IMG/VR virus record: IMGVR_UViG_3300025098_000012
Span: 62,001-126,000 of that record
Strand: one strand, 5' to 3'
Length of the DNA stretch: 64,000 nucleotides
In this document: positions 20,744 through 44,998 of the stretch, piece by piece
Numbering within the stretch: position 1 is the first letter of the stretch
How the letters are laid out: the number at the start of each line of letters is the position of its first letter
Program-made: the position numbers and the translations under genes
Notes under the pieces: generated by a model
Seen by the model: the letters and a program-made list of their open reading frames with translations, nothing else
The model's database searches: none
What the model was told of the DNA's origin: nothing

Positions 20744-20836
20744 TTACAGGTTCTTCATACGATAGTAGCTGACGATGAAGAGTCCGATGAGGCAGATGCT
20801 TACTACACCTGCGATGTCTAGTATTGTTGAGAGCAT
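20744..20836 (-). CDS. 30-aa membrane micropeptide MLSTILDIAGVVSICLIGLFIVSYYRMKNL
   Basis: SD AAAGGAGA; single hydrophobic helix; stop is the TAA inside the motif. Confidence 0.7.
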   Translation of the reverse strand: MLSTILDIAGVVSICLIGLFIVSYYRMKNL

Positions 20837-20848
20837 TGTTATTCTCCT

Positions 20849-20920
20849 TTAGGCTGAACCCTTTTGGTTGTTCTGATAGATAGTGATAATAATCATTAGT
20901 GCGATGAGTTTAAGTGTCAT
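20849..20920 (-). CDS. 23-aa hydrophobic micropeptide MTLKLIALMIIITIYQNNQKGSA
   Basis: Fills the gap between two genes; GGAAGG upstream. Confidence 0.5.
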   Translation of the reverse strand: MTLKLIALMIIITIYQNNQKGSA

Positions 20921-20921
20921 G

Positions 20922-21134
20922 TTAGACCTTCCATACTTGCGAGTGTCCAAAGCGAGTCTCTAATGCCTCTAGGAACGCACTTTGGCTCTTGGGTGAACCC
21001 TCCACATCAACTTTCACATAAGGCTCGTAGGGAGTGCCTTCTCGTGTCTTTAGGGAGACACCACAGGAGACAGTTATTGAGTGGAGCTGAAACTCTTTAG
21101 CGTGGACGGTTCGAGTCATGGCGAGGGTAGTCAT
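20922..21134 (-). CDS. Hypothetical protein
   Basis: In operon; AGAGAG before start. Confidence 0.65.
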   Translation of the reverse strand: MTTLAMTRTVHAKEFQLHSITVSCGVSLKTREGTPYEPYVKVDVEGSPKSQSAFLEALETRFGHSQVWKV

Positions 21135-21145
21135 AAGTTTCTCTC

Positions 21146-21667
21146 TTAGCGAGGGTTGTTGAACGCATCACGATCAACAGTCTCATCGAACTCTGTGATC
21201 TCGTGTCGGATGTAGCGAGGGAGATTAAGGTTCTGCTCGATGCAGTTTCGGATCTCCGTAAAGAGATGCTTGGCCTCTTTGAGTGGGTAGTGTCCATCAA
21301 CGATGACACCTCGAACATACTGACGACCATCTTCAGAGAAGAAGAAAGGGCTTCCATCTCTGCGGGTCAATCGCCCACTGTAGCTCTTAGGTCGGTTGGT
21401 GTTATTTCCTGCGAGGCTTGCGATGGTGCTAGGGATAAGACCCTTAGAACCAAAGATTACCTTATCGACATCGCTTGAGGTGCATTGAACACCTGCCTCA
21501 TTGATGAGGGCAGTTGCTTGCTCAAGACTGTTGTTTGAGGTGAACGCTTGGAGGCGAGTCAGACGCTCTTGCAACACATCCTTATAAGGGATGGTCATGT
21601 CGAGTACGACATTGTAAGCGTTGTCTCCATTGATGCGTCCTAGTTTTACTCTTGGGTGGTTAGTCAT
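21146..21667 (-). CDS. Hypothetical protein, paralogue of 23351-23956
   Basis: KGLI..YVRGVIV..IRNCIEQNLNL versus KGLL..HVRGIII..LKNAISKELDL. Confidence 0.75.
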   Translation of the reverse strand: MTNHPRVKLGRINGDNAYNVVLDMTIPYKDVLQERLTRLQAFTSNNSLEQATALINEAGVQCTSSDVDKVIFGSKGLIPSTIASLAGNNTNRPKSYSGRLTRRDGSPFFFSEDGRQYVRGVIVDGHYPLKEAKHLFTEIRNCIEQNLNLPRYIRHEITEFDETVDRDAFNNPR

Positions 21668-21743
21668 TCTTTTTCTCCATTGAGAGTGGTTGGTTGGTGG
21701 GCTTGGTTGCCCTCATGTAAGGTTATAGATAAGGGGTTACGCT

Positions 21744-22043
21744 TTACGCTTCTAACTCATCAGTTAGTTGAGAGTTAGTTTCATCGAAGAAAAAGTCGAG
21801 TGAGCTTCGATTACTCTCAGCGACTGTGGCTGTCGTATTGATGAGATCATAGAAGCATGGAGCTTCGGGTGCGACCTCCTCCATTACGCTCACCATGTTG
21901 ATGTACATCCCACGCTCTGAGATGTTGATCTCCTCATCATTCTCATGAGCCTCATCCATGAGGTCTTGGAGTTGATTGCGATACGCTTGCATCTGTGATT
22001 CTATCTGACGAGAGAGCTGTAGTAGTTTATCTTGAACTGTCAT
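21744..22043 (-). CDS. Acidic hypothetical protein (cassette gene)
   Basis: Motif plus SD. Confidence 0.75.
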   Translation of the reverse strand: MTVQDKLLQLSRQIESQMQAYRNQLQDLMDEAHENDEEINISERGMYINMVSVMEEVAPEAPCFYDLINTTATVAESNRSSLDFFFDETNSQLTDELEA

Positions 22044-22100
22044 TGTTTCTCCTTTAAGAGTTGGTTGGTTGTCGATTACATAGGGTACATAGATAAGGGG

Positions 22101-22367
22101 TTACGCTTCTTCCTTTAGAGCATTATCGAGGAACGAGTCTAAAGCACTCTCGATCTCTCCTGCATCATTCACTTGGATGAGGTATCCCCATGATCTCATG
22201 TGGTCATTTCGGTTTACATTCATGTGATAGAGCGTGTTAGGTTGCACCTTATCTAGCTCTCTCTCAGTAAGCATCTCTTGAGACATCACATCAGTTAGTC
22301 TCATGTGGTGTGTCTCGCTATCTGCGTTAGCAAATGCGAGGTAGTCAGTTCGGGTAGGTCGGATCAT
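22101..22367 (-). CDS. Hypothetical protein, paralogue of 42393-42671
   Basis: RPTRTDYLAFA versus KPTKTDYLAYA; REL..V...T; GEIE. Confidence 0.75.
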   Translation of the reverse strand: MIRPTRTDYLAFANADSETHHMRLTDVMSQEMLTERELDKVQPNTLYHMNVNRNDHMRSWGYLIQVNDAGEIESALDSFLDNALKEEA

Positions 22368-22369
22368 TA

Positions 22370-22747
22370 TTATCCTTTCTCCATGTTCTTCATGTTGTTA
22401 ACGATGTCAGCGAAGTTGATTACTCCCTTCGTGTTCTCATTGCGTTCTTCAAGCTCCCGATTCAGTTGTATCAGCATAGCTTCTTCGATCTTGCCTATGA
22501 TCTCATCAGCATGATTGACGATCTCACCAAGAGGTGAAATGCTGAACTGAAAGTCTCCCTCTAGCCATTCGGGAAAGTCCATGTCTCCATCTTGCCAGTG
22601 ATCATATTTGTACTCGTAGAAGTACCGACCTGCTGGTACTAGATCATCGCCTTGAAAGACTTGACCTGTAGTGGTTGATGTTACTCGGAAGCCATCTGGG
22701 TTTCCCCCGATAGCCCACTCGATGATAGATTGTATGTCTTGTCTCAT
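22370..22747 (-). CDS. Hypothetical protein (cassette gene)
   Basis: Motif plus SD AAGGAGA. Confidence 0.75.
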   Translation of the reverse strand: MRQDIQSIIEWAIGGNPDGFRVTSTTTGQVFQGDDLVPAGRYFYEYKYDHWQDGDMDFPEWLEGDFQFSISPLGEIVNHADEIIGKIEEAMLIQLNRELEERNENTKGVINFADIVNNMKNMEKG

Positions 22748-22967
22748 ACATCTCCTTATCTAGTTGTCAAAGAAAGTTAGTGGGTGGTCTCTACCACCCT
22801 CGATACTAGTACATAGATAAGGGGTTACGACTCGCCTGTGGCCTAAACAGCAAACCTCTTAAGAGTTGAGGGATTTCGGGGGTTTAGCTACTCGTAACCC
22901 CTTATCTATAGAACAGTATCGGGGCTGAATGACTCACCCCACCAACCACTCCCCAATGGAGAACAAC

Positions 22968-23228
22968 ATGAACGCACTTTCCCCCCTAACATACGCAGAA
23001 GCCTCACATGGTGTAAGTCAGATAGTAAGCAAGCTCGGTTTCCCACTCTTTATGGGTGAGGCAGAGCGTAAGCCTACTGTCAAGGCTGTACGACAGCAAG
23101 TAGGAGCGTACTACAGCTCTCTTGCTAAAGAGAACAAACTCGACTGTCTCCATGCGTATGACGCAGAGAACAAGGCAGATCTGATCGAGAACGCTGTTGC
23201 CGAGCTTCTTGAGCGAGTCGAGGGCTAA
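22968..23228 (+). CDS. Hypothetical protein (cassette gene)
   Basis: Start re-assigned to the ATG after SD GGAGA. Confidence 0.75.
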   Translation: MNALSPLTYAEASHGVSQIVSKLGFPLFMGEAERKPTVKAVRQQVGAYYSSLAKENKLDCLHAYDAENKADLIENAVAELLERVEG

Positions 23229-23350
23229 GGGAGTCGGGGTCGTAACCCCTTATCTATAGACCTAGTGTGAGAGGCTAGGGGAACAATCAACCAGCAATCA
23301 TATAACATTTACATCAACTGCAAATCACATCTCTTGAAAGGAGAACCATC

Positions 23351-23956
23351 ATGCAGAACATCACAGCAACCAACAACACAAGCATCACTTTCACCACAAC
23401 CAAGAGTGGAAAGGCAGACCTCAAGAAAGACGGTGGTACAGTTCGTGGTCGTCATACAGTACAAGTGGATATGCTTGTGGGTACTGACCACAAGACCATC
23501 GCAGGTCTTGACCTCACTAAAGTCTTAACTGCTGACCGAGCAAAGCTCAAGACAGCTCTTGAGACTCGTGGCTTGGTCTTTACTGACCTCGACTTCACCC
23601 TCGCTCTCGATGGGGATCAGCCTCGCAAGAAGGGTCTGCTCACAGCACTTCGACAGTCAGCTACAGGCACTAACGATGATAACAAGCACTTGGAGGCTTA
23701 CTCTGATCACCCTTGTGGGGTGCGTGGGGTGAGCATCCATGATGGGACAGGTGATGTCCATGTGCGTGGTATCATCATCGGAGAGAAGATCATCTCGGCT
23801 GACCCAAACGGTGATGCGAGAAAGACCAAGAGTGGTCTTCATGTCCAACTCAAGAACGCTATCAGCAAAGAGTTGGATCTTACCACTCGCAAGTGGAGAC
23901 AGTACAAGCTCCCTGCTTCTGCGACCGTAAATGGGGTTGACAACCCTACCCTCTAA
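23351..23956 (+). CDS. Hypothetical protein, paralogue of 21146-21667
   Basis: Motif plus SD AAAGGAGA. Confidence 0.8.
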   Translation: MQNITATNNTSITFTTTKSGKADLKKDGGTVRGRHTVQVDMLVGTDHKTIAGLDLTKVLTADRAKLKTALETRGLVFTDLDFTLALDGDQPRKKGLLTALRQSATGTNDDNKHLEAYSDHPCGVRGVSIHDGTGDVHVRGIIIGEKIISADPNGDARKTKSGLHVQLKNAISKELDLTTRKWRQYKLPASATVNGVDNPTL

Positions 23957-24032
23957 TCCTCATCGGGTGCTTCGCTGTAACCCTTTATTTATAAGTTTAC
24001 ATCAGCCAACCATACCACTAAGGAAAGCAATC

Positions 24033-25268
24033 ATGGCAAAACCAAATCTAAGTAAGACTGTAAGAGAAAACATCCCTTTCATCCTCGGTGGGAATGGGGA
24101 GATGAACAAGAAAGAAATTCGAGATGCGTATGTCGCTCTTGAGGGGTGTTCGTCAGAACACGACTTTGGAACAAATAAGGACACTTGGAGCAAGCTCCGA
24201 TCTGCTATACATGGAGCGTGTCCTAAGCTCGTGAAACAAGGTGTACTCTTTCAACCGAGTAAGGGTAAGTTCGATGTTGTACAGGGTACAGCTATCCCCT
24301 CAGCCTTTGTGCCTTTCCTAAATAGTCAGCCTGTGGTCAAGCCTGTTGAGGTCGCTCCTGTGGTCGAAGCCGAGCCTGTAGTCGAGGTTGAGGAAACCGT
24401 TGAGGTCGCTCCTGTAGAGCCTGTGGTCGAGGTTGAGGAAACCGTTGAGGTTGAGGAAACCGTTGAGGTTGCTCCTATGGTCGAGGTGAGTGTGAGCAAC
24501 CCTGCTGTAATCGAAGCCCATATCGACACCGAGACTCAAGAGCTTGTCGAGAATGTTGGTGGTAGCCGAGATTGGCGAAAGCCTCTTGATGAGGTTGAAG
24601 ATGGGTACATCACTTCAAGCGTACAGGTCAGCACAACAACACTTGAGCCTGTTGCAGAGCCTGTTGCAGAGCCTGTTGCTGAGGTTGCCCCTGTAGAGGT
24701 CGAGGTTGCCCCTGTAGAGCCTGTGGAGGTTCAAGAGGTGGTAGAGCCTACCCCTGTGGTAGAGGACGATGTAGAGGACGATGTAGAAGATCCTGTAGAG
24801 GACGATGATGAGACTCAAGATGAAGATCAACAACCGAGCTATGATCTTAGAGATCTTCGCAAGAGTGCTTCCTTCGATCCTTTGAAGATCACCTTAAAGA
24901 ATGGGGCTACAGGTAGCTATGAGGTGTATCGAGACATGGAAGCACGAATGGTGGTTTTGACTCAAAAAGGTCGTGAGGACTATGTGATGATCCCTGTCGA
25001 TGTGGATCAAGACCGACTTGACGCTCTTAATGAGTTAGATGCTCGTTATGCTCCATACGCTATCAAGTCAGTGGCAGACTTTGACTCAGCACAGCACCAC
25101 AAGGACGGATGTAAGCGTATGGTGACAGCTCTCGTATCCTGTACAAAGAACTGCGACCATACGGATGACTTTGGTGGTCTAGCCGAGTCTTGCCCTAAGC
25201 CTCACGACTGTCCACTAAAGAGCATTTGGGGAGAGGTGGCGATCTATGTCGATCCCCAAGACGCATAA
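24033..25268 (+). CDS. N-terminal winged-helix (Mrr_N-like) protein with long acidic E/V/P repeat linker and Cys-rich C-terminus
   Basis: KLRSAIHGACPKLVKQGVLFQPSKGKF; VEVEET/PVAE/DDVE repeats; four C-terminal Cys. Confidence 0.7.
   Translation: MAKPNLSKTVRENIPFILGGNGEMNKKEIRDAYVALEGCSSEHDFGTNKDTWSKLRSAIHGACPKLVKQGVLFQPSKGKFDVVQGTAIPSAFVPFLNSQPVVKPVEVAPVVEAEPVVEVEETVEVAPVEPVVEVEETVEVEETVEVAPMVEVSVSNPAVIEAHIDTETQELVENVGGSRDWRKPLDEVEDGYITSSVQVSTTTLEPVAEPVAEPVAEVAPVEVEVAPVEPVEVQEVVEPTPVVEDDVEDDVEDPVEDDDETQDEDQQPSYDLRDLRKSASFDPLKITLKNGATGSYEVYRDMEARMVVLTQKGREDYVMIPVDVDQDRLDALNELDARYAPYAIKSVADFDSAQHHKDGCKRMVTALVSCTKNCDHTDDFGGLAESCPKPHDCPLKSIWGEVAIYVDPQDA
24330..24810 (+). repeat. In-frame imperfect tandem repeats (GTTGAGGAAACCGTTGAG; GAGCCTGTTGCA; GTAGAGGACGAT)
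   Basis: Seen directly. Confidence 0.85.
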
Positions 25269-25479
25269 TGAAACCCCTCTCAAGCTGTTAAGTGAAAGCC
25301 GACTAGAGCGAGGATTAAGGGAAATAGCCCCGACACTTAAGAGCTTGAGACTAGATCAAAACATACTCAACTTAAAGTTTAGCCAAATGACAATCATTCT
25401 CCCCCTAACATCAACCATGACTTGGGGGCAACTAACAAACTCCCTACAGGAGAAAGGTCTTACCCATGAGCCTAACTAA
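25246..25479 (+). CDS. Hypothetical protein
   Basis: Overlapping operon member. Confidence 0.5.
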   Translation: MSIPKTHNETPLKLLSESRLERGLREIAPTLKSLRLDQNILNLKFSQMTIILPLTSTMTWGQLTNSLQEKGLTHEPN

Positions 25480-25702
25480 AAGAGAACTGCAAGACTCAAT
25501 CATCATCGTAATCGAGCGAGATGGTACACACCACATCAAAATCCCAAACAATGACAGCCTAGAGTTTGATCGAAAGGCTTATAACGCAATGATGAACACC
25601 ATGACCGTCCTAGACGAACCGAGCTTTGTATTGAGGGCTTTCCTTTGGATCGAACGGAGACTTCAATCTCTTAATGTCATGATCTTTGGAGCGAGTGCTT
25701 GA
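25466..25702 (+). CDS. Hypothetical protein
   Basis: Overlapping operon member. Confidence 0.6.
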   Translation: MSLTKRELQDSIIIVIERDGTHHIKIPNNDSLEFDRKAYNAMMNTMTVLDEPSFVLRAFLWIERRLQSLNVMIFGASA

Positions 25703-26055
25703 TTATGAAAAGATACACACGAAAAGTGAATGGGAAGATTGAGTGGGAGTATCACAAACTCTTACCCGATGAAGATGCTGGAGATTTGATTAGAGGTGCT
25801 TGTTTGGAGATGGGGTTTGTTCCTATTGATTCTGGAATCTACGCATTAAAGACAGACGAGGGGTTCTTAAAGGTTATTTGGCAAGGGGAAGAAAGACATG
25901 GCTGGATAGTAGAAATAAACAACTACTCCGAGATGTTTTTCATCCGCCAAAGTTTGTTCGATACCATAAGGTCGGTATGGTCACATGAGCGTAAAAACCC
26001 TTTAGCTTCACCTCCTATTTTTTCTTCAAAAGAGATCGAAGAAATACTAGGTTAA
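25699..26055 (+). CDS. Member of the IR.VW paralogue family
   Basis: KVNGKIEW...LEMGF...DTIRSVW. Confidence 0.7.
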   Translation: MIMKRYTRKVNGKIEWEYHKLLPDEDAGDLIRGACLEMGFVPIDSGIYALKTDEGFLKVIWQGEERHGWIVEINNYSEMFFIRQSLFDTIRSVWSHERKNPLASPPIFSSKEIEEILG

Positions 26056-26061
26056 GATTTT

Positions 26062-26508
26062 TTAAAGTTTATCATCGAGCCAAGAGAGATCCAGCGTCCA
26101 ATTATGTTTGGATCTCTCATTCCATTGCTCAAAGACTTGAACGATGTAGTCCTCAGTCTCTTGAGGTGTGAGGCTATTGACGGAGGCAAGTTTGTGTAGT
26201 ACCTGCGATTGAACTTGGGGCGACTCTACTGAGAGGGTTCGCCCGATGTGTTTGACCTTGTGGCAGGTAGGGCAGAGAGAAATCAGACCTTTGAGAGTTT
26301 GGGTCTTGGTCTGATCGTCATAATCCCATATCTCGTGGCACTCAACAGGCCACTTAGACCCTTTGCCTCCACAGACTTCGCATTTGTACCCTGCTTGCTT
26401 GTAAGAGGCTTTGCGTAACTTATCCCATTGGGGTTTAGAGAGGTTAGCTTCAGAGCGTAGGTTATTGCCCCATGATGATTGTGGTACGAGTTCAATCGAG
26501 AGCTTCAT
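26062..26508 (-). CDS. HNH endonuclease
   Basis: CEVCG...ECHE.W.YD...LCPTCHKVKH. Confidence 0.85.
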   Translation of the reverse strand: MKLSIELVPQSSWGNNLRSEANLSKPQWDKLRKASYKQAGYKCEVCGGKGSKWPVECHEIWDYDDQTKTQTLKGLISLCPTCHKVKHIGRTLSVESPQVQSQVLHKLASVNSLTPQETEDYIVQVFEQWNERSKHNWTLDLSWLDDKL

Positions 26509-27643: not shown

Positions 27644-27702
27644 TTTTAATACTTTCTTTATGTCTCTCTTAATACAGATCATTTATATGAAAGGCATAAA
27701 CA

Positions 27703-29612: not shown

Positions 29613-29664
29613 ACTCGGTTCTCCTTTCGGGAGGGGCTGTTTATATGATCTTATAGGTAAGGGG

Positions 29665-30081
29665 TTACGACCTCTTGAACTTGACTTGGTAGGTCTGCAT
29701 TGTTTCGAGGTTGGGTACAGCGTAGAACGCTTCCTTTACTTCTTCGGGTGCATCCCGAAACTCAGACCATCTGATCGTGTATGAGTGAGCGATGTACTGA
29801 TCGAAAAGATCCTCCCCGATAGCGTCCTCGATGTCGTTGATGTCTACCGACTCTAGCTTAGGTGTCGGGGGTTGCTTCTCCACCCTAGTCGTGTATTTGC
29901 CCGATGCAGACTCGATGATGAGATCTTGTTCGTCTGCCATTTCGATCAGTTCAGACTTGAAGCTCTTAAGAGACTTACCGAGTCTGTTCTGTGCTTCCCA
30001 CAGCCGAGAGGCCGCTTCGGTTCGCTCGTTGATGTCGAGGTTGGTGTCGTTCATTTGGTTCATGAGTGCGTTGAAGTTCAT
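29665..30081 (-). CDS. Hypothetical protein
   Basis: Start re-assigned after GGAGA; stop inside the motif. Confidence 0.75.
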   Translation of the reverse strand: MNFNALMNQMNDTNLDINERTEAASRLWEAQNRLGKSLKSFKSELIEMADEQDLIIESASGKYTTRVEKQPPTPKLESVDINDIEDAIGEDLFDQYIAHSYTIRWSEFRDAPEEVKEAFYAVPNLETMQTYQVKFKRS

Positions 30082-31540: not shown

Positions 31541-31629
31541 AGTTTATCTCCTTTAGGAGTGGGTAGGTGAGCGATCTCGCCTTTCAAGAGTTAATAGATA
31601 AGGGGTTACGGAGTGCGATCCCCCCGACT

Positions 31630-32769: not shown

Positions 32770-32822
32770 AGGGTTCTCCTTGTCGAAGTGGTTGCGTTGA
32801 TGTAGTTCTCATAAATAAGGGG

Positions 32823-32864
32823 TTACGGTTCAGAGCCTCGCTCCATGACCTTATACAATCTCAT
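32823..32864 (-). CDS. 13-aa mini-ORF MRLYKVMERGSEP between two motif copies
   Basis: GAGGGAG before the ATG; stop is the TAA of the next motif. Confidence 0.4.
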   Translation of the reverse strand: MRLYKVMERGSEP

Positions 32865-33055
32865 GAGGAAATGCTCCCTCACACTAGGATATAAATAAGG
32901 GGTTACACTATATACACATACGAATGATAGGATCTCCAACAAGAAGCGTAAGTACTTGATTACCTAGCAAAAAGCCTAAAGTGTAACCCCTTATCTATAG
33001 AGTAGTGTAGGGCGATCAAGCCTACCAACCAATCACTCCCACTAAGGAGAACAAA

Positions 33056-33223
33056 ATGAAATACCAAGTAATGCTCAACAACAAAGTCCTCTCAACACAT
33101 AAAAATCATGACCTCGCTGAGAAGGCTCTCAAGCGTTGGGAGAAGAAACACAAAGCTCAAGGCAAAGGTCGGGTCATCGGAGAGTTTTTGGTCGGTGGTA
33201 TCTACCACATCGAAGCTGTGTAA
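33056..33223 (+). CDS. 55-aa basic protein not in the ORF track (MKYQVMLNNK...YHIEAV)
   Basis: Full leader, SD AAGGAGA; stop inside the next motif. Confidence 0.8.
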   Translation: MKYQVMLNNKVLSTHKNHDLAEKALKRWEKKHKAQGKGRVIGEFLVGGIYHIEAV

Positions 33224-33313
33224 CCCCTTATCTAAGACCCTGTGTCGAGGACTGATTTTCCTCGCTTTCATATAAATACAAGACTACCCACTCACTCACC
33301 AAAGGAGATCCTT

Positions 33314-34459: not shown

Positions 34460-34513
34460 TAGGTTGGGTACTCCGTAACCCCTTATTTGTCTACTCTTGA
34501 AAGGAGACTTATC

Positions 34514-35755: not shown

Positions 35756-35812
35756 GTAACCCGAAATCTATCTGACCCCATCACCGAACCCACTCCCACA
35801 GGAGAACCAAAC

Positions 35813-36197: not shown

Positions 36198-36294
36198 TTA
36201 TAGATTTCTAACTTGTGGCCCGAAGCTGTAACCCCTTATTTATAACTTAGTATCGGGGCAATGAAGCCCACTCACTCTGACAAGGAGAACCAAC

Positions 36295-36819: not shown

Positions 36820-36991
36820 GGTCTAGGGTGGGTCGGAGCTGAAAAGCTCTTAGAAGAGCATTTAAGAGCTTAATGGAAAAAGGAATAACGACTATGTTTT
36901 CGGGGGTTTGGAGTTCGTAACCCCTTATTTATAGAGTAGTGTAAGGGGAACAATCCCCACCAACCAATCACTCCAACAAGGAGAACAAGAC

Positions 36992-37294: not shown

Positions 37295-37375
37295 CAATCG
37301 GGAGGCGTAACCCCTTATCTATACCATAGTGTAAGAGGGATTGACCCTCACCAACTACTCAAGGAGAAAAAAAGA

Positions 37376-37696: not shown

Positions 37697-37889
37697 GAGA
37701 GGTCGGACTGAGGTAATGTAAGAGGGGAGCAATCCTTGAGCGTAAGGTTAAGAGGGGCAACTTAATCCAGAAGCTAGACATCTAGGGGTGGCGAGGTCTG
37801 AGCGTTATAGTGGGATAAGTCGTAACCCCTTATCTATAAGATTGTAAGAGGAACGATCCTCTTAGACTACACTCCAGAAAGGGAGAACA

Positions 37890-38486: not shown

Positions 38487-38490
38487 CGAG

Positions 38491-39054
38491 ATGACTTTAA
38501 GAGAGCAGATACAACAGAGAGCAGAGATGATAGGTCAGCTAGGTGGTCGAGGCGACCTTATGACGCAAGAGCAGTATGTACTCGATAAGGGTACTCAGAT
38601 GGCTTCTACTGAGCCTTTAACAGATGAGCAGTACGCTTACCTCAGAATGATCACAGGAGCGATTGAGTGCCTTCCTAAGCAGTGTTTCTACAATGCTCAG
38701 ATGATGACACTTACGGACAGCTATCATGAGACACAGAGGGTCAAGTACCACGAGGGCTATGTGTGGACGGGGATCATGCCGATCCTTCATGGTTGGATCA
38801 CTCTTGACGGTAAGATAGTGGATGTAACACTCAGCACCGATCCACAGTCAACGCAACGCTTCTTTGATGGAGAGCCACCACGAGAGGACTTGATGGACAG
38901 GGTGTTAGGAGTGATCCCCGATGAGTGGGAGTATATCGGTGTGCCGATGGAGGGTGAGTATGTGGTGAGCTTCATGCTAGAGAAAATGGAGTCTCGATCC
39001 CTCATCGACAACTGGCAAGACGGATGGCCTCTGTTGAGACAGAGTGATGGTTAG
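38491..39054 (+). CDS. Transglutaminase/papain-like fold protein
   Basis: QCFYNA...EGY...HGW...IVDVT (putative C-H-D triad). Confidence 0.6.
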   Translation: MTLREQIQQRAEMIGQLGGRGDLMTQEQYVLDKGTQMASTEPLTDEQYAYLRMITGAIECLPKQCFYNAQMMTLTDSYHETQRVKYHEGYVWTGIMPILHGWITLDGKIVDVTLSTDPQSTQRFFDGEPPREDLMDRVLGVIPDEWEYIGVPMEGEYVVSFMLEKMESRSLIDNWQDGWPLLRQSDG

Positions 39055-39470
39055 CCTTTAAGTTGAGAGAGTACCTCTAGCTCTAGGATGCGAGGGTCAT
39101 CACTTGCTTCGATGGTGAGTGTGTCATCCCCCCGACTAGTCGTGATCTCCCCTTTGCGATTGATGTAAGTCTCAGTAGGTCGAGTGATCTTTGCCTTGAA
39201 GAGTTCGACACCCATCTCTTCTTTAAAGGACTTTACAAGAGCCTTGATGATGTCGGTGTCCTCCACACCTGCTGAGGAGATGCGATACTCAACAGTCTTA
39301 GTGATGAGAGGAGCGATGCCATGATCTCGGTCATCGCCCCAATATGATTTGTGGTATCCGATGGTCATGCCCTTGAGTTCCGTAGCGACAGCCACGAGGT
39401 TGTCGAAGGACGAGTTATAGTCGGTGCAAGAGTGGTTTGCGATTTTGACAGCTCGGTTGATTGCTTCCAT
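39051..39470 (-). CDS. Hypothetical protein, paralogue of 39645-40046
   Basis: GYHKSYWGDD..APL..LF...ITRPT..RKG..TT.RG..TL.I. Confidence 0.8.
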   Translation of the reverse strand: MEAINRAVKIANHSCTDYNSSFDNLVAVATELKGMTIGYHKSYWGDDRDHGIAPLITKTVEYRISSAGVEDTDIIKALVKSFKEEMGVELFKAKITRPTETYINRKGEITTSRGDDTLTIEASDDPRILELEVLSQLKG

Positions 39471-39559
39471 GTGTTCTCCTTTAGAACTTGTTGGTGATGC
39501 TCCTCTTTAAGTAAGGGGTTACATTAGCCCGTCCTTAGCTCCATAAAGAGGAGGAGGGT

Positions 39560-39584
39560 TAAATAGGAAGTGAGTTCCTATTTA
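39560..39584. repeat. 25-bp palindromic site TAAATAGGAA-GTGAG-TTCCTATTTA, copy 1
   Basis: 10-bp inverted arms, 5-bp asymmetric core; identical to 40142-40166. Confidence 0.95.
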
Positions 39585-39644
39585 GGGTTGTAACCCCCTA
39601 TTTATGAGGGTGCATCAACCACTCACTCCCAATGGAGACAAAAC

Positions 39645-40046
39645 ATGATCGACATCATCCTTAACAACGCACTCAAGAGCTTCGAGACTTACGATGAAAC
39701 CTTCAAGCGAGTGATCCCAACAGCCCATGCCGAGATCGAGAATATGAGCTATGGTTATCACAAGTCTTTCTTCGGAGATGACACCGATGTGAACGCTCCC
39801 CTCGTTCAGCGTACAGGAACATATAACCTCGTCTGCGACCCGAAGGATCACGAGGCTATCGTAGAAACTATCGCAGAGGAGTTCGCTAAGGTGGAGTCCT
39901 GTGTCAAGCTCTTCGGCATCGAGATCAGCCGACCAACTAGAACCAAGTGGGTCGCTCGTAAAGGGAAGGCCACCACTCGCAAGGGAACTACCACCCTCAA
40001 CATCACTTGGAGCGAGGACAGTCGCATCACGACTTGGAAGCTCTGA
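39645..40046 (+). CDS. Hypothetical protein, paralogue of 39051-39470
   Basis: GYHKSFFGDD..APL..LF...ISRPT..RKG..TT.KG..TL.I. Confidence 0.8.
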   Translation: MIDIILNNALKSFETYDETFKRVIPTAHAEIENMSYGYHKSFFGDDTDVNAPLVQRTGTYNLVCDPKDHEAIVETIAEEFAKVESCVKLFGIEISRPTRTKWVARKGKATTRKGTTTLNITWSEDSRITTWKL

Positions 40047-40141
40047 GATAGCTCTTAGAGAGTAGTTCGAGTCGTAGCCTTTGCCCTCACCCACCTTGAG
40101 AGGCTTAAGGCTCTTAGAGAGCAATCCGAAGCGTCTAGTTC

Positions 40142-40166
40142 TAAATAGGAAGTGAGTTCCTATTTA
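40142..40166. repeat. 25-bp palindromic site, copy 2 (direct repeat)
   Basis: Identical to 39560-39584; contains the TAG stop of 40160-40438. Confidence 0.95.
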
Positions 40167-40438
40167 ACCATGACAAGGTTATACGCAAACTTGAGCCAAT
40201 CCTCAGCGTAGTTGCCTCCTTGCCACATAAGGAGTTGCACCGAGTTTTCAAACTCTCGCCATTCAGCAAGGGTCTTATTGTTAGTGTTCATCCAGCGAGA
40301 TCTCAAGTCTCGGTAATGACCTCGTGCAAGATCTTCCCACATAGGAAGCCAACTTGACCGATCCGTCCTAGAATTACGAAGCAACTGTATAAGGTCTATG
40401 GTCGTCATTTCTCTAGTCATTTTCATGTCCTTGTTCAT
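40160..40438 (-). CDS. Hypothetical Trp-rich protein
   Basis: TCATATAA upstream. Confidence 0.6.
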   Translation of the reverse strand: MNKDMKMTREMTTIDLIQLLRNSRTDRSSWLPMWEDLARGHYRDLRSRWMNTNNKTLAEWREFENSVQLLMWQGGNYAEDWLKFAYNLVMVK

Positions 40439-40606
40439 ATAACTTGAGTACCTATTTATTATATGATTTGGAGACTGAAAATGACTTCTCTGATGAGAAG
40501 TTATCGAGGGTTTGACTCGTTCTTAAAATGGCAAATATGGGTAGGGTTTCTAGCTAGTCTATGTTAGTGATACAGCAAGCGAACTGGATCAAACACTACC
40601 GACACC

Positions 40607-41080
40607 TCATCGAACCTTAGCCAGCTCCCTATCGCAGATCTCATTCGACCTCTTCTCGAAGATGGGGCAGTTGTCCATCATGTAGCTATATGCGTCTTGC
40701 TGAAGGTCAATCCCCTTAACCGATCTAGTGTCCTTGAGGCAGGTGATGAGATAAAGCAGACGACCACTAGGAGGGTTGGGGAAAGCCCACTCCATCACTT
40801 GATCCTCCGTCATCTTAGACACGACCTCATTAAGCCAAGACTTATCTGAGTCGGTGAGAGCGAAGTCCTGTGGCTTACGGTTGAAAGCCCACCACAGCCT
40901 CATCTCCATGTGGTTGCTGATGACTCCATGCTTCTTGTAGTATGCCCTAGCGATCTTCACATCATTCTCGACAACATGGTCGATGTCCGATTGGCTGAGG
41001 GTCGGGAGGCGAGGGTTATCATTCTCTCGCTCATGGGTCTGACGGATGTGCTTGCGATACTGACTTAAGAGATTTTCCAT
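40607..41080 (-). CDS. Hypothetical protein
   Basis: SD AAAGGA; 5' hairpin leader. Confidence 0.75.
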   Translation of the reverse strand: MENLLSQYRKHIRQTHERENDNPRLPTLSQSDIDHVVENDVKIARAYYKKHGVISNHMEMRLWWAFNRKPQDFALTDSDKSWLNEVVSKMTEDQVMEWAFPNPPSGRLLYLITCLKDTRSVKGIDLQQDAYSYMMDNCPIFEKRSNEICDRELAKVR

Positions 41081-41195
41081 TGTTCGTCCTTTGCGGAGTT
41101 GGTTCGGAAGGTGAGGGTCTGATTGTCTGCCCTCTATCTAGTCAACACAGGGGCTGTCCTTTTCTTTTCAGCACATCACTTTTTGATTAAACTTT

Positions 41196-41804
41196 TTACC
41201 CACGAGGGAGCATACCCTCCCTTGAGTCAAAGTTATACTCCTCGATGATCTTGTTGATCCTCTCAAGCTGAGTAGCTACCCACTCTTGATTGCCCCCACC
41301 TTTAGTGTCGTAGTGGTGGTCGAGGAGGTGGAGATTTTGGTCAATGCTGAACAGCTCCGAACTGAGCCTCCAGTTCGCATCATCGTAGTCCTTGACGACC
41401 TGTGGTGGCAAGATCTCAACCTCCCACGCTTGATCTCTGAGGAGGTCATTAAGCTCATCCTCTCGCTCGTCCTCATCTAAGGTGGGGTCGAGCGATGCCT
41501 TAGCCGCCTCCTCATCAAACCACTCCCGATTGATGTCCCAAGGGTACACACCTTCCATGACGCAGTGGTCGCAAAGCTCCTCGTCATGGTCGTACTCGTC
41601 ATATCCGACACAGTATGATGCCATGTATCGTCCTGCCCCATTACACTCAGTGCAGACCTTAGCCTCAGCGTAGCGAGATGCTTGGAGTTTAGCCTTAGCC
41701 TCCTCTAGCTTCGCCTTGAGGGTGGGGAGGGCCTTGATCTCGCTCTCGATTTGAGCGATGAGGACTCGCTCGGAAGTTTTGATGTCTTGTAGTGATGGCA
41801 TCAT
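41196..41804 (-). CDS. Coiled-coil plus DnaJ-type Zn-finger protein
   Basis: CTECNGAG...CDHC; start re-assigned after GGAGA. Confidence 0.75.
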   Translation of the reverse strand: MMPSLQDIKTSERVLIAQIESEIKALPTLKAKLEEAKAKLQASRYAEAKVCTECNGAGRYMASYCVGYDEYDHDEELCDHCVMEGVYPWDINREWFDEEAAKASLDPTLDEDEREDELNDLLRDQAWEVEILPPQVVKDYDDANWRLSSELFSIDQNLHLLDHHYDTKGGGNQEWVATQLERINKIIEEYNFDSREGMLPRG

Positions 41805-41884
41805 ATTGATGTCTCCATTAGGAGTGAGTGAGGTGCGTGATGATTCTGCACCTCTTACATAAGGATATAGATAAGGGGTTACGC

Positions 41885-42067
41885 TCACGCTTGCTTGAGG
41901 AGCGTCTTAGCCTCCTCTGCCTTGTCAGCGTCAACCTTGATATGGACGATCTGATTTGCAGGCACAGGGTGGAAGCTAGGGTTCAAGTGGGTTATGACAG
42001 CCATGATGTCATAGAGCTGATACATGGTTGAGGTGTCGGGTAAGGACGCTACGGTGGTTCGGGTCAT
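41885..42067 (-). CDS. Hypothetical protein
   Basis: SD AGGAGG. Confidence 0.7.
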   Translation of the reverse strand: MTRTTVASLPDTSTMYQLYDIMAVITHLNPSFHPVPANQIVHIKVDADKAEEAKTLLKQA

Positions 42068-42355: not shown

Positions 42356-42392
42356 GTTGGTTCTCCTTAGTGGTTGATACAAGGTTATCTGT

Positions 42393-42671
42393 TTAAGGGG
42401 TTACGAAGTGCTTGCTACTGCACTCGATCTCCCCTGTCTCACCGTTGATGCTGATCCCGATGTCCTCCTCTTTATCACCGTTGCGATCTAGGATGTTGAG
42501 TTGGAGGGGGGTGTCTACAGGCACATTGCGAAGCTCTCGTCCTTCCCATCCGTCTGTGGCGAAGTCGAGGATGTTCCCATTCTCATCGTACTCGCAAGCA
42601 CAGATCTCAACTTGATGGTTTCGAGAGTAGCCTGCATAGGCGAGGTAGTCTGTTTTAGTAGGTTTACGCAT
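42393..42671 (-). CDS. Hypothetical protein, paralogue of 22101-22367
   Basis: Shared motifs; last codons V-T-P-stop are encoded by the motif. Confidence 0.75.
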   Translation of the reverse strand: MRKPTKTDYLAYAGYSRNHQVEICACEYDENGNILDFATDGWEGRELRNVPVDTPLQLNILDRNGDKEEDIGISINGETGEIECSSKHFVTP

Positions 42672-42805
42672 AAGCATAAGTCCTTTCATAGTTGTCAAAG
42701 AGTTAGTAGGGCAACCACTGTCGCCCTCGATACTGTTCAATAAATAAGGGGTTACGCCAACCTGTAACCCCTTATTTATTACAAAGCATCAACCAAGGAG
42801 AACCT

Positions 42806-42955
42806 ATGTATGAACTATATGATCGCTTTGAGAAGGAGGTCGTCAAGACCTTTGCCTCTCTAGGAGAAGCAGGGTTTTACCTCGCCCAAGAGGTAGAGCA
42901 AGAGTATCGAAAAGAGCGTGGGGTGAGTCTACCTCGCTTCACTATCAACTACTAA
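42806..42955 (+). CDS. 49-aa protein not in the ORF track (MYELYDRFEK...RFTINY)
   Basis: Motif plus SD AAGGAGA. Confidence 0.75.
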   Translation: MYELYDRFEKEVVKTFASLGEAGFYLAQEVEQEYRKERGVSLPRFTINY

Positions 42956-42968
42956 GAAAGGACTGCAC

Positions 42969-43610
42969 ATGACCTTGACCCAAAAAATAAACGGGGTTCG
43001 CAAGATGATCCCGACACCACATCACAAGACTGCGTACAAGACCAAAGGGTCTATGCAGTCCTGGTATGACCGACACACCAAACTTTTCACTGAGCTTGCT
43101 GAGGAGATAGGCTTTGAGGTCAGTAAAGAGACAGGCACTCTATCCTCTTTTACGGGCACTATCTTGAACATCAAGAAGAGTGGGTTTGGGGACTTTAAGC
43201 TCACCTTGAGATGGGCTAAGGATGGTTTATCTACGGTGCGTCTATGTGGCAACAGCACTGACCATACAGTCTACCCTTATCAGACATGGCGAGGGTACGA
43301 GAAGCCTCAGTCTCATAATGATGCTCACTTGGGTAACTGGTTCCTCAAGTTGATACGATTGGATTGGGTCGCTGGTAACAGACCGAACATCCATCAGATC
43401 AAGGTCGATGATGAGATAGTGTTTAGTGGCACACCAGGTGGTGGTGGTCAACGCACACGAGCTAAGGTTGTAGGGTATGGTGGAGCATGGGGTCGTAGCT
43501 ACTTCAAGGTGTCGCTATTAGAGGAGCGAGGGGTGAAGAAGATCAAACCTGTGGGAACGGTCATGGAGGTACACTATAACTGCATCATCCACCACGAGGG
43601 CAAAGCGTAA
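42969..43610 (+). CDS. Hypothetical protein with C-terminal SH3-like segment
   Basis: IKVDDEIVF..RAKVV; stop inside the motif. Confidence 0.75.
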   Translation: MTLTQKINGVRKMIPTPHHKTAYKTKGSMQSWYDRHTKLFTELAEEIGFEVSKETGTLSSFTGTILNIKKSGFGDFKLTLRWAKDGLSTVRLCGNSTDHTVYPYQTWRGYEKPQSHNDAHLGNWFLKLIRLDWVAGNRPNIHQIKVDDEIVFSGTPGGGGQRTRAKVVGYGGAWGRSYFKVSLLEERGVKKIKPVGTVMEVHYNCIIHHEGKA

Positions 43611-43653
43611 CCCCTTAAGCATATAATAGCATACAGCACTTGAAAGGACTGAC

Positions 43654-44025
43654 ATGACCATCGAACAACAGCGACTCCAATATGCAACAATCCGAAACAG
43701 CCTACCCCAACCTTTTCGTGGGGAGTGGAGAAACATCGAGCAAGCCTTTACTGACCTTGATGTACCTCCTACCCCTAGCGAGTGGGTATCCGAGCTGTCC
43801 AAATACAGCTCTGAGGTATCTCAATATAAGTCGGCTCTTGATGCTTGGGTCAATCTCCGAATGGAAGATGAAGCAGGTTGGGGTGAGGATCACGATCCTA
43901 ATCAAATCAATGGGTGGCGAGATGACCTCAGCATTGTCAGCAAGACGAGCCTCTTGCGAAGGCAGTTTAACGAGGACTTAAACACCATGATAAGCTACGA
44001 TGAGTGGCGAGAAAGTAGAGACTAG
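43654..44025 (+). CDS. Hypothetical protein
   Basis: Motif plus SD AAAGGA. Confidence 0.75.
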   Translation: MTIEQQRLQYATIRNSLPQPFRGEWRNIEQAFTDLDVPPTPSEWVSELSKYSSEVSQYKSALDAWVNLRMEDEAGWGEDHDPNQINGWRDDLSIVSKTSLLRRQFNEDLNTMISYDEWRESRD

Positions 44026-44029
44026 TAAT

Positions 44030-44347
44030 ATGACGACATACGCTAATAACTGTGGACACCTACAAGACCTTATCTCCGAAGCTCACAGTGAGAGATTAAG
44101 TGAGAGCGATGCGAAGATATGGGCTAAGTCATTCATAGAGGAACTTGAGAACTATGAGGAGGTCAAGGACATGGCACACCACTATGGCATCTCCTCAGTC
44201 GAGGTAGCCCACCACCAAACGATCAAAGCACATCTCTTAAAGAAGATGGTCGAGGAGATGCTCGACTTTGACAGTGCCGATGATGAGGATGAATACTATG
44301 CCCTAGATGATGACGACTATGGCGATGGTATGGAGGGCGAGCTATGA
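44030..44347 (+). CDS. Acidic hypothetical protein
   Basis: D/E-rich tail; operon member. Confidence 0.65.
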   Translation: MTTYANNCGHLQDLISEAHSERLSESDAKIWAKSFIEELENYEEVKDMAHHYGISSVEVAHHQTIKAHLLKKMVEEMLDFDSADDEDEYYALDDDDYGDGMEGEL

Positions 44348-44934
44348 AGGCACTCATAGGGCTGACGATCAAGAAGGCTAAGGAGGTAGCCAAGCAAGAG
44401 CTAGGGGTCAAGAGAATGGGCGATGCTCGCTTTCAGATGATCCTCGATCAAGGGGTCAAGAGTGGCGACTTCATCCTTGACGGTGATATGATTAAAGACC
44501 CAAGCGAAGATGATCCCTTAGACCTGTTCGGTGAAGTGGTTGTCGAAGATGACCCCTTAGACCCCGATCCAGTTATTTCTACTAAGACCACGCATCCCGA
44601 AGTGGCTCTCCTTGACCCCAAGCTGTCTAGCTCTGACCTGCCAAGAGCAGGTGATCTCTACCACTACAGATCATACTCTGGTGAGGTCGTGCAGGGTGAA
44701 GTAAAGTCAACCATCTGCTTTGCCGAATGTCAAAACCCCGATGGTACATGGCAAACGGTAGCCTTCCAAGACCTCTATCTCAAAAAGCGTGGTGTGCCTA
44801 AAGAGACAATGCTCAACCACCTTAACGCTTACTACCAAAATAATAACCACTTAAGATCTGAGCGTGATCGGCTTTTAAAAGAAATCAGCGAGCTAGAAGG
44901 GAAGATTAACCAGGCGAAGGGAGATACGCAGTAG
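44344..44934 (+). CDS. Hypothetical protein
   Basis: ATGA coupling; C-terminal coiled coil. Confidence 0.75.
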   Translation: MKALIGLTIKKAKEVAKQELGVKRMGDARFQMILDQGVKSGDFILDGDMIKDPSEDDPLDLFGEVVVEDDPLDPDPVISTKTTHPEVALLDPKLSSSDLPRAGDLYHYRSYSGEVVQGEVKSTICFAECQNPDGTWQTVAFQDLYLKKRGVPKETMLNHLNAYYQNNNHLRSERDRLLKEISELEGKINQAKGDTQ

Positions 44935-44998
44935 TAACCTCTTATCTATAACCTAGTAAGGGAATGAACCTCTCCAACCACTCCCTAATGGAGACAAC

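What the first reader, a model, noticed from the sequence alone, without database searches (positions are those of the whole stretch)
20744..44950. The motif supplies the stop codon of the upstream gene
Seen: the TAA at motif positions 2-4 is the in-frame stop of six ORFs (stops at 20744, 22101, 29665, 32823, 33221, 43608). At 42393 the motif encodes V-T-P-stop, and at 44934 it shares the G of a TAG. Four more stops lie 0-3 nt before a copy (3500, 21744, 35753, 41885). Known: integron cassette ORFs often end inside the attC inverse core. Inference: units are joined precisely at the motif's 5' edge, although simple compaction by deletion could give the same pattern.
Basis: partly seen in the sequence, partly recalled or inferred. 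Interest (0 to 1): 0.7.

Follow-up and report, generated by a model that had tools for sequence, protein, structure and literature searches.

The report
Phage promoter whose TAA ends genes
In this uncultured marine huge phage, a 17-base promoter-like repeat begins with G-TAA, so tightly packed upstream genes often stop on the promoter's own TAA; this is ordinary genome compaction, but the same repeat is also where gene modules get reshuffled between related phages.

Summary
The motif is (Y)GTAACCCCTTATYTATA: 45 copies in the 226.7-kb viral contig, 30 of them in window 20.7-46.8 kb. It points at a ribosome-binding site plus ORF 30-130 nt downstream in 41 of 45 copies.

Five genes end on its TAA (stops at 20744, 22101, 29665, 33221, 43608). 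The sixth, at 32823, closes only a 13-codon mini-ORF. The 42393, 44934 and four near-miss cases are as described.

The pile-up is not chance. Across 108 de-duplicated contexts from related contigs, 17 stop at motif position 2; the next commonest offset has 5.

The overlap does not show cassette joining:
- Orthologues keep the same C-termini while the stop slides by 3-27 nt.
- Database homologues are not longer.
- A second promoter class, TAATAGTTTATTTATA, overlaps stops more often (24 of 45 contexts).

Separately, rearrangement breakpoints between relatives do cluster at the motif edges: module swap, inversions, cassette loss or gain. This resembles PeSL-mediated shuffling in T4-type phages, not integrons.

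The polymerase that reads the motif was not identified.

The parts
3480..3496 (-). Class A motif copy. Stop of 3500-3886 lies 3 nt upstream. Drives 2951-3421.
   Evidence: orthologue gaps vary (offsets -5, -6, -10)
20731..20747 (-). Class A copy. Its TAA is the stop of the 30-aa ORF 20744-20836. Drives 20495-20707.
21724..21740 (-). Class A copy. Stop of 21744-22043 lies 3 nt upstream (GCG TAA AGC GTAA). In relatives L096 and L066 the 6 nt are missing and the motif TAA is the stop.
22088..22104 (-). Class A copy. Its TAA is the stop of 22101-22367. Position 1 is the right edge of a two-gene cassette (22105-22772) absent from relatives.
22812..22828 (-). Class A copy, one of a divergent pair. 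Drives 22370-22747.
22894..22910 (+). Class A copy, one of a divergent pair. Drives 22968-23228. An upstream GGGGGTT run pairs with the motif's AACCCC.
23242..23258 (+). Class A copy, 13-nt gap after 22968-23228. GGGGTCGTAACCCC plus a T-rich tail scores as terminator-like.
23977..23993 (+). Class A copy (1 mismatch), 20-nt gap after 23351-23956.
29652..29668 (-). Class A copy. Its TAA is the stop of 29665-30081. The R2 lineage has TCT TAG TAA instead of TCG TAA, with the same protein length.
31593..31609 (-). Class A copy, 20-nt gap after 31630-32769 (AAA_5 ATPase).
32810..32826 (-). Class A copy, tandem with 32890-32906. Its TAA closes only a 13-codon mini-ORF.
32890..32906 (-). Class A copy in the conserved P- P- P+ cluster.
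32983..32999 (+). Class A copy. Drives 33056-33223.
33220..33236 (+). Class A copy. Its TAA is the stop of 33056-33223. The same holds in the R1 orthologue at 53% identity.
34475..34491 (+). Class A copy, 15-nt gap after 33314-34459.
35756..35771 (+). Degenerate copy (GTAACCCGAAATCTAT) directly after the TAA of 35411-35755. Relatives have no motif here.
36228..36244 (+). Class A copy, start of module 36228-36868. This module is swapped in order with the 36917 module in relatives R1 and G001.
36917..36933 (+). Class A copy, start of module 36917-37306. See the swap at 36228.
37307..37323 (+). Class A copy, 12-nt gap after 36992-37294. Junction of the swapped modules.
37822..37838 (+). Class A copy. 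One boundary of the block 37822-41882 that is inverted in the R2, R3 and R4 relatives.
39506..39522 (-). Class A copy (1 mismatch), one of a divergent pair.
39590..39606 (+). Class A copy (1 mismatch), one of a divergent pair. A breakpoint in R1 lies at position -2.
41866..41882 (-). Class A copy. TGA of 41885-42067 lies 2 nt upstream (offset -13, an 11-nt gap, in relatives). Other boundary of the inverted block.
42388..42404 (-). Degenerate copy (GTAACCCCTTAAACAGA). ORF 42393-42677 reads V-T-P-stop through it. The relative's orthologue stops at offset -19, with 17 nt before its motif.
42739..42780 (.). Back-to-back divergent class A copies forming an 18-bp (17-nt motif copies plus one flanking A-T pair) perfect palindrome around an 8-nt spacer. 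They bound segment 42404-42779, which is inverted in R1.
43607..43623 (+). Class A copy with a degenerate 3' half. Its TAA is the stop of 42969-43610.
44934..44950 (+). Class A copy (1 mismatch). The TAG of 44344-44934 shares the motif's G, giving an in-frame TAG-TAA tandem.
45515..45531 (+). Class A copy, 11-nt gap after 45375-45503.
46124..46140 (+). Class A copy. Drives 46165-46767.
46799..46815 (+). Class A copy. An R1 breakpoint lies at position 1.
62735..62750 (+). Class B promoter-like motif TAATAGTTTATTTATC. Its first TAA is the stop of 61361-62737. This serves as the control class.

Best explanation
The motif (Y)GTAACCCCTTATYTATA, with a weaker TnGTRT at positions 21-26, is a phage promoter. 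It probably serves the early, orphan-gene-rich region of an uncultured marine huge phage.

Its first bases are G-TAA. The phage packs genes tightly, so small deletions bring gene ends up against the promoter. The furthest a gene can move without damaging either element is to finish with a last sense codon NYG, which supplies promoter positions -1 and +1, and to use the promoter's TAA as its stop. That state accumulates as an end point.

The proteins are not truncated, and the stop slides in and out of the motif between close relatives. The same happens at the second promoter class, which begins TAA-TAG.

Separately, the roughly 45-67 near-identical motif copies per genome act as patches of homology, probably through the phage's own UvsX-type recombination. 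Modules made of promoter, leader and gene(s) are swapped, inverted, lost or gained at these patches, as at PeSL elements of T4-type phages. A stop that sits inside the invariant part of the motif travels intact through any such exchange.

Shown: the anatomy, the statistics, the sliding stops and the breakpoint clustering. Inferred: promoter function, temporal class, the recombination mechanism and which polymerase reads the motif.
For: Promoter-like behaviour:
- 41 of 45 copies here and 58 of 67 in G001 have a ribosome-binding site plus ORF 30-130 nt downstream, against 0.19 at random positions.
- Copies occur as outward-facing divergent pairs, and nearly all lie outside ORFs.
- The logo carries 2 bits at 12 or more positions.

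Compaction:
- Orthologues toggle between +2, -1, -5 and -19 with unchanged C-termini. Examples: TCG|TAA against TCT|TAG|TAA; GCG TAA AGC GTAA against GCG|TAA.
- 15 of 108 contexts are polymorphic for offset among the sampled relatives.
- Homologues of the 213-aa gene are 209-217 aa, with a variable 3-7-residue tail.
- All 17 contexts at +2 end in an NYG codon.

Generality:
- Class B overlaps stops in 24 of 45 contexts, 11 of 23 copies in this genome and 19 of 33 in G001.

Shuffling:
- 13 of 56 breakpoints in window 20-47.5 kb fall in motif windows that make up 2.9% of bases, p=7e-9.
- 11 of 24 intergenic breakpoints do so, against 18.6% expected, p=0.002.
- Sharp peaks lie at positions -2..+1 and 16-19.
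- Gene-order maps show a module swap, two inversions bounded by inverted copies, and cassette indels. These are reproduced in independent assemblies.
- A UvsX-like recombinase is encoded at 57699-58925.
Against: - No transcription start has been mapped. The RNA runs held only scraps of relatives.
- No RNA polymerase or sigma factor that could read a 17-bp motif was found here or in the complete relative. The motif does not look like a sigma-70 promoter.
- A pure deletion-to-a-wall model predicts smaller pile-ups at the walls of the other two frames as well (offsets -3 and -5). These are only weakly seen (1 and 4 contexts). The strong bias to the TAA frame therefore needs an added ingredient, either microhomology between the native TAA and the motif TAA or selection against reading into the promoter.
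- Loci were fetched because they contain the motif, which inflates the genome-wide breakpoint enrichment. The intergenic-only test within the region is the fair one.
- Many indels also occur at gene boundaries without the motif.
Confidence: 0.7

Rival explanations
1. Integron-like cassette system. A dedicated enzyme cuts and rejoins at the motif's 5' edge, so each unit is delivered ending exactly there and borrows the motif's TAA.
For: - The right edge of the two-gene cassette 22105-22772 is motif position 1.
- Breakpoints peak at positions -2..+1.
- A type IB topoisomerase (PF01028, E=8.5e-12) is conserved in this genome and in G001. The poxvirus TopIB target CCCTT (from my own knowledge) lies at motif positions 6-10.
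Against: - The stop slides by 3-27 nt between orthologues with no change of neighbours.
- Class B promoters show more overlap.
- A peak nearly as large (7 against 11 breakpoints) lies at the motif's 3' edge (positions 16-19). That is what exchange anywhere inside a shared patch gives.
- There is no integrase and no attC-like structure. Units have their own promoters and lie in both orientations.
- CCCTT occurs 550 times in the genome at 0.93 of expectation.
Confidence: 0.07
2. Selected insulator. The stop triplets in the promoters (class A: TAA at 2-4, TAR at 16-18, TAG at 21-23, one in each frame; class B: TAA-TAG in tandem) are kept because they end translation of whatever lies upstream. This makes the modules freely portable, and the overlap is a designed feature rather than a by-product.
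For: - Class A carries stops in all three frames.
- The -1 state gives in-frame TAG-TAA tandems in 4 contexts.
- ORFs rarely read into the promoter in the other frames: 4 against 17 for class A, 3 against 24 for class B.
Against: - TAA is invariant in copies with no co-directional upstream ORF, such as the divergent pairs 22828/22894, 32906/32983, 39522/39590 and 42755/42764. It is therefore needed for recognition in any case.
- Only about 40-60% of copies carry the second and third stop.
- A/T-rich promoter cores contain stop triplets by composition.
Confidence: 0.15
3. The motif is not a promoter. It is a terminator, an RNA-processing site or a selfish repeat that sits at gene ends, which is why it meets stop codons.
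For: - 8 of 45 copies have an upstream G-run that pairs with AACCCC and is followed by the T-rich TTATYTAT, against 5% background, p=0.002.
- One such copy is scored as terminator-like.
Against: - The hairpin is absent from more than 80% of copies.
- The motif is strictly oriented towards a downstream gene start at a median of 61 nt.
- It occurs in divergent intergenic regions with no gene end upstream.
- No Rfam family matches.
Confidence: 0.06

Closest known systems
PeSL elements (promoter-early stem-loop) of T4-type phages: Arbiol et al. 2010, PMC2839356; Comeau et al. 2014, PMC4122927
   Same: - A conserved promoter sequence is repeated many times in regions rich in orphan genes.
- Insertions, deletions, replacements and reorderings between relatives are bounded by the repeats.
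- The phage has its own homologous-recombination genes.
- Some copies combine a terminator-like hairpin with the promoter.
   Different: - PeSL promoters are sigma-70-like, with an adjacent stem-loop that works as a terminator. Here the motif is one 17-bp block with no -35/-10 pattern.
- The common hairpin lies downstream in the leader, in about half the copies. Only 8 of 45 copies have an upstream terminator-like arm.
- The phage is not T4-like: it has a family A DNA polymerase and its closest GenBank relative is an uncultured 485-kb phage at 45.7%.
- Mini-circles have not been tested.
- Stop-codon overlap was not examined in my reading of the PeSL papers. Only passages from a term search were read.
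Single-subunit (T7/T3/SP6-type) phage promoters
   Same: - A 17-nt block of near-invariant sequence ends in TATA, with two classes that differ in the upstream half. T3's promoter contains TAACCC (from memory).
- These promoters often sit at or inside the 3' ends of upstream genes in compact genomes (established knowledge).
   Different: - No PF00940 polymerase was found in this genome or in the complete relative, although that search had no positive control.
- There is no conserved G at the position after TATA.
Integron attC sites
   Same: Cassette ORFs commonly end inside the recombination site, and units are exchanged at a repeated site.
   Different: - There is no IntI and no imperfect-palindrome attC.
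- Cassettes here carry their own promoters and lie in both orientations.
- The stop position drifts between orthologues.
T4 late promoter TATAAATA and T4 middle promoters with a MotA box
   Same: - Both classes here share a TATYTATA core, preceded by a class-specific block (GTAACCCC or TAATAGTT). This is a possible core-plus-specificity layout.
- A purine-rich position lies 6-8 nt downstream.
   Different: - No sigma-70 region 2 (PF04542) was detected. Specific models for a gp55-like late sigma, MotA or AsiA were not searched.
- The spacing and sequence differ.

Membership tests
Integron (attC cassette array) | An IntI-type tyrosine recombinase gene | tested here: not met
   The only PF00589 hit (23.7-27 bits) is a 475-aa protein whose best family is Topoisom_I PF01028, E=8.5e-12. 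It has no NCBIfam integron-integrase match.
Integron (attC cassette array) | An attC site that is an imperfect inverted repeat folding as a single-strand hairpin | tested here: not met
   The motif is not self-complementary. Folds of -32..+20 show no common structure. Only divergent pairs form palindromes.
Integron (attC cassette array) | Promoterless cassettes in one orientation behind a common promoter | tested here: not met
   Each unit has its own motif 40-110 nt before the start codon, and units lie on both strands.
Integron (attC cassette array) | Cassette ORFs end inside the site | tested here: met
   5 to 6 ORFs in the window do so, and 17 of 108 contexts overall. The same is true of class B promoters.
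PeSL-type regulatory cassettes | A conserved promoter sequence repeated in variable regions rich in orphan genes | tested here: met
   30 of 45 copies lie in a 26-kb region of mostly hit-less small genes. The promoter itself is not sigma-70-like.
PeSL-type regulatory cassettes | An adjacent stem-loop that acts as a terminator | tested here: inconclusive
   An upstream G-run pairs with the motif in 8 of 45 copies, p=0.002. A downstream leader hairpin occurs in about half, with z below -2 in 11 of 45. Function was not tested.
PeSL-type regulatory cassettes | Indels, replacements and reorderings between relatives bounded by the elements | tested here: met
PeSL-type regulatory cassettes | Circular excision products (mini-circles) | not testable with these tools
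   DNA runs are held only as contigs. Joints at motif copies had sides under 35 nt, which is repeat noise.
T7-type single-subunit RNAP promoter | A cognate phage-type RNA polymerase gene | tested here: not met
   PF00940 is absent from G000 and from the complete G001. The control genomes lack the family, so sensitivity is unverified.
Sigma-70 promoter | -35 and -10 hexamers at 16-18 nt spacing | tested here: not met
   No predicted site coincides with a motif copy. Such sites are depleted, 13 against 22.4 expected. There is no information upstream of position -2.

The most novel reading that the evidence does not exclude
The motif is the target of a dedicated breakage-rejoining or DNA-binding activity. 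One candidate is the conserved phage type IB topoisomerase acting at the CCCTT inside the motif. Another is the five-HTH protein at 26505-27254. Under this reading, huge marine phages would run a promoter-borne, integron-like cassette exchange. The stop triplets present in all three frames of the promoter would be selected so that any module can be dropped behind any gene.
Probability: 0.07. Interest if true: 0.8.

Novelty: new variant of a known kind. Interest (0 to 1): 0.38.

Why it matters
The stop-in-promoter overlap is itself an ordinary outcome of genome compaction. It should not be read as a cassette signature, and that is useful to know when scanning other phage genomes.

What deserves attention is the setting: a family of uncultured marine phages of roughly 200-375 kb. 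Their orphan-gene region is organised by one invariant 17-bp promoter that does not resemble a sigma-70 promoter. No polymerase or sigma factor that could read it was recognised. The promoter also marks the joints at which modules are swapped and inverted.

This extends promoter-mediated modular shuffling, so far described as PeSLs in T4-type phages, to an unrelated lineage. It also gives a concrete handle, the motif, for finding relatives and for mapping their early transcription.

Tried and rejected
- Megablast of window 20-44 kb against GenBank phages: no match.
- Pfam and PHROG scans of the large proteins, looking for a polymerase. They found only a family A DNA polymerase, helicases, baseplate and tail proteins, a portal, a protease, UvsX and a clamp.
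- The 3037-aa ORF is a V/G/S/T-rich protein with no hit in Pfam, PHROGs or PDB sequences. I dropped it as a polymerase candidate.
- A search for the D.DGD motif found only a tail or baseplate-hub protein.
- PF00940, PF00623, PF00562 and PF04542 were searched in this genome. PF00940, PF00623 and PF04542 were also searched in the complete relative. All were negative.
- Metatranscriptome runs held only short contigs of relatives, with no 5'-end information.
- DNA-run joints at motif copies had flanks of 22-34 nt. They are repeat cross-matches, not evidence of recombination.
- Rfam: no family in the window.
- Enrichment or avoidance of CCCTT as a topoisomerase signal: none, ratio 0.93.
- Literature search for the motif strings: nothing relevant.
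- Chance as an explanation of the overlap: rejected.
- Truncation of proteins at the motif: rejected.
- One atlas call failed on a length limit and was not repeated.

Full report
**Context**

The window is bases 62,001-126,000 of a 226,698-bp linear IMG/VR viral contig. It has 43% G+C and CheckV rates it 73% complete. The DNA comes from marine metagenomes.

The contig encodes a baseplate J protein, a portal, a protease, a family A DNA polymerase, helicases, a sliding clamp and a UvsX-like recombinase. No GenBank phage is close at the DNA level. The nearest DNA polymerase, at 45.7% identity, belongs to an uncultured 485-kb phage. This is therefore an uncultured marine huge phage.

**The motif**

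The cited stops define the motif (Y)GTAACCCCTTATYTATA. The 12-mer core, allowing one mismatch, occurs 45 times in the contig. Thirty copies lie in window 20.7-46.8 kb. Positions 1-12 and 14-16 are nearly invariant. Position -1 is C or T in 42 of 45 copies. A weaker TnGTRT follows at positions 21-26.

Evidence that it behaves as a promoter:
- 41 of 45 copies are followed by a strong ribosome-binding site plus ORF 30-130 nt downstream, at a median of 61 nt. Random positions give 0.19. In a complete relative the figure is 58 of 67.
- Copies form outward-facing pairs in divergent intergenic regions.
- About half are followed by a small G+C-rich hairpin and a C/A-rich leader.
- Sigma-70-type sites are depleted in the region (13 against 22.4 expected), and none coincides with the motif.

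**Checking the observation**

Five real genes stop on the motif's TAA:
- 22101-22367(-)
- 29665-30081(-)
- 33056-33223(+)
- 42969-43610(+)
- 20744-20836(-), a 30-aa hydrophobic ORF with an excellent ribosome-binding site, conserved at 90-93% in relatives with the same stop

The sixth case, 32823, closes only a 13-codon mini-ORF between two tandem motif copies. The V-T-P-stop at 42393, the TAG sharing the G at 44934, and the gaps of 3, 3, 0 and 2 nt at 3500, 21744, 35753 and 41885 are all as described.

**Is it more than chance?**

An exact-pattern scan of IMG/VR returned at least 109 loci from dozens of contigs at 75-88% DNA identity. One of these contigs is a 375,691-bp record rated 100% complete, which I call G001.

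The 325 motif instances collapse to 108 distinct upstream contexts. In 17 of them a same-strand ORF of at least 50 codons stops at motif position 2. The next commonest offsets have 5 contexts (-13) and 4 contexts (-5, -4, -1).
- Position test: 17 of 64 contexts, against 1/35 expected per position, gives p=2e-12.
- Frame test: of ORFs that enter the motif, 17 use the TAA frame and 4 use the other two frames, p=1e-5.
- G001 alone gives 8 of 57.

**Does the overlap reflect truncation or joining?**

It does not.
- g29665 ends TCG|TAA here and in R1, but TCT|TAG|TAA in R2. The protein is 138 aa in all three.
- g21744 ends GCG TAA AGC GTAA here and GCG|TAA in R1.
- g42393 reads through a degenerate copy here. 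In the relative it stops at offset -19, leaving 17 nt before an intact motif.
- g3500 and g41885 show offsets of -5, -6, -10 and of -4, -13 among orthologues.
- Fifteen contexts are polymorphic for offset.
- Homologues of the 213-aa gene in the 5.8-billion-protein collection are 209-217 aa. They share a conserved ...IIHH, followed by 3-7 variable residues that mostly end in A, V, S or K.
- All 17 contexts at +2 have a last sense codon of the form NYG. The promoter's Y at -1 and G at +1 are therefore kept and double as codon positions 2 and 3.

The stop slides by small indels, and +2 is the closest approach that damages neither element.

K-mer counting of upstream regions found a second class, TAATAGTTTATTTATA. 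It has 23 copies at up to 2 mismatches here and 37 in G001. It is spread over the genome and often carries a conserved leader of about 45 nt. A third class has the core AATCATATAAG.

Class B begins with TAA-TAG in one frame. Upstream ORFs stop on these triplets as follows:
- 24 of 45 contexts
- 11 of 23 copies here, counting open frames of at least 40 codons
- 19 of 33 copies in G001

One example is in the window: gene 61361-62737 stops on the TAA at 62735. The overlap is therefore at least as frequent at another promoter class. It is a property of compact genes meeting promoters that begin with stop triplets, not of a class A cassette mechanism.

**Modules are nevertheless joined at the motif**

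- BLAST alignment ends between this genome and its relatives peak at motif positions -2..+1 (11 breakpoints) and 16-19 (7 breakpoints).
- Within window 20-47.5 kb, 13 of 56 breakpoints fall in motif windows that cover 2.9% of bases, p=7e-9.
- Among intergenic breakpoints, 11 of 24 do so, against 18.6% expected, p=0.002.

Gene-order maps show several rearrangements:
- The 36228 and 36917 modules are swapped in R1 and G001.
- Segment 42404-42779 is inverted in R1.
- Block 37822-41882 is inverted in R2, R3 and R4, between two motif copies in inverted orientation.
- Several modules are lost or replaced.

The two-gene cassette 22105-22772 is absent from R1. Its right edge is motif position 1 and its left edge is the end of a leader. 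Each arrangement recurs in independent assemblies: R1 and G001 agree, and R2, R3 and R4 agree. Misassembly is therefore unlikely.

Two caveats apply. The loci were fetched because they contain the motif. Many indels also lie at boundaries without a motif.

**Mechanism**

The evidence is best read as two linked processes.
1. Compaction by deletion pushes gene ends against a promoter that begins with a stop triplet. The strong bias to the TAA frame suggests an added factor, which I did not test: either microhomology between the native stop and the motif's TAA, as in GCGTAA-AGCGTAA, or selection against reading into the promoter.
2. The many near-identical copies act as homology patches for exchange, presumably through the phage's UvsX pathway, as described for PeSLs of T4-type phages (PMC2839356, PMC4122927).

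A stop inside the invariant part of the motif survives any such exchange.

**What reads the motif is unknown**

No T7-type polymerase, multisubunit polymerase domain or sigma-70 region 2 was detected here or in G001.

**Integron membership fails**

The only tyrosine-recombinase-fold protein is a type IB topoisomerase. The motif is not an attC-like palindrome. Units carry their own promoters and lie in both orientations.

The poxvirus TopIB target CCCTT (from my own knowledge) lies inside the motif. However, the pentamer occurs 550 times at 0.93 of expectation. I keep this only as a low-probability novel reading.

**Verdict**

- The cassette-junction reading of the stop overlap is not supported, although the units are indeed exchanged at the motif.
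- This is a new variant of a known kind of system, of moderate interest.

Noticed in passing
window 62735-62810, and genome-wide (for example G000 136418, 153962, 165140, 167864, 187940, 212839, 219082): The class B motif TAATAGTTTATTTATA is often followed by a conserved leader of about 45 nt (CCCTCTCATAAGTGATCTCTTTAACCTTAAACCAATGGAGAA...). The motif plus leader forms a repeat of about 70 nt that cross-matches many loci.
   Followed up: partly
window 4590(-), 23296(+), 35325(+), 40468(-), 55735(-), 56758(-), 58981(-): A third recurring upstream element has the core AATCATATAAG, about 15 copies genome-wide at up to 1 mismatch. It may be another promoter class.
   Followed up: no
window 26505-27254 (-): A 249-aa protein built of about five tandem helix-turn-helix units (HTH_58, HTH_psq, sigma-70 region 4-like, Cbp1-like). 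The gene contains internal DNA repeats. Relatives carry only about 330 nt at this position. It is a candidate sequence-specific DNA binder.
   Followed up: partly
G000:C1:180850-182277 (+), outside the window; orthologue in G001 near 62279-62695: A 475-aa protein with a type IB topoisomerase catalytic core (PF01028, E=8.5e-12), conserved in both genomes. This is unusual for a phage.
   Followed up: partly
window 9149-18262 (-): A 3037-aa ORF, rich in V, G, S and T, with no match in Pfam, PHROGs or PDB sequences. It is probably a virion structural protein, since it lies among tail and baseplate-like genes.
   Followed up: partly
window about 22870-22903, 23236-23258, about 31609-31634 (-), about 36893-36926: In 8 of 45 copies a G-run (GGGG, extended to GGGGGTT in some copies) 4-20 nt upstream pairs with the motif's AACCCC and is followed by the T-rich TTATYTAT. 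This forms a terminator-like hairpin that shares sequence with the promoter (background 5%, p=0.002).
   Followed up: partly
window 42739-42780: Two divergent motif copies form an 18-bp (17-nt motif copies plus one flanking A-T pair) perfect palindrome around an 8-nt spacer (fold about -24 kcal/mol).
   Followed up: no
window 20850-20920 (-) and 20744-20836 (-): Two very small hydrophobic ORFs of 23 and 30 aa lie in tandem. The first overlaps the previous stop as TAACATG. They may be membrane peptides.
   Followed up: no
class A copies at 29652-29668, 33220-33236, 42388-42404, 43607-43623: Copies that abut or overlap an ORF are slightly more degenerate in positions 12-17 than other copies (mean 1.12 against 0.72 mismatches per context, p=0.047). 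They may be weakened promoters inside read-through units.
   Followed up: partly
window 20000-39999: Sigma-70-type consensus sites are fewer than in shuffled sequence: 13 against 22.4, sd 4.8.
   Followed up: no
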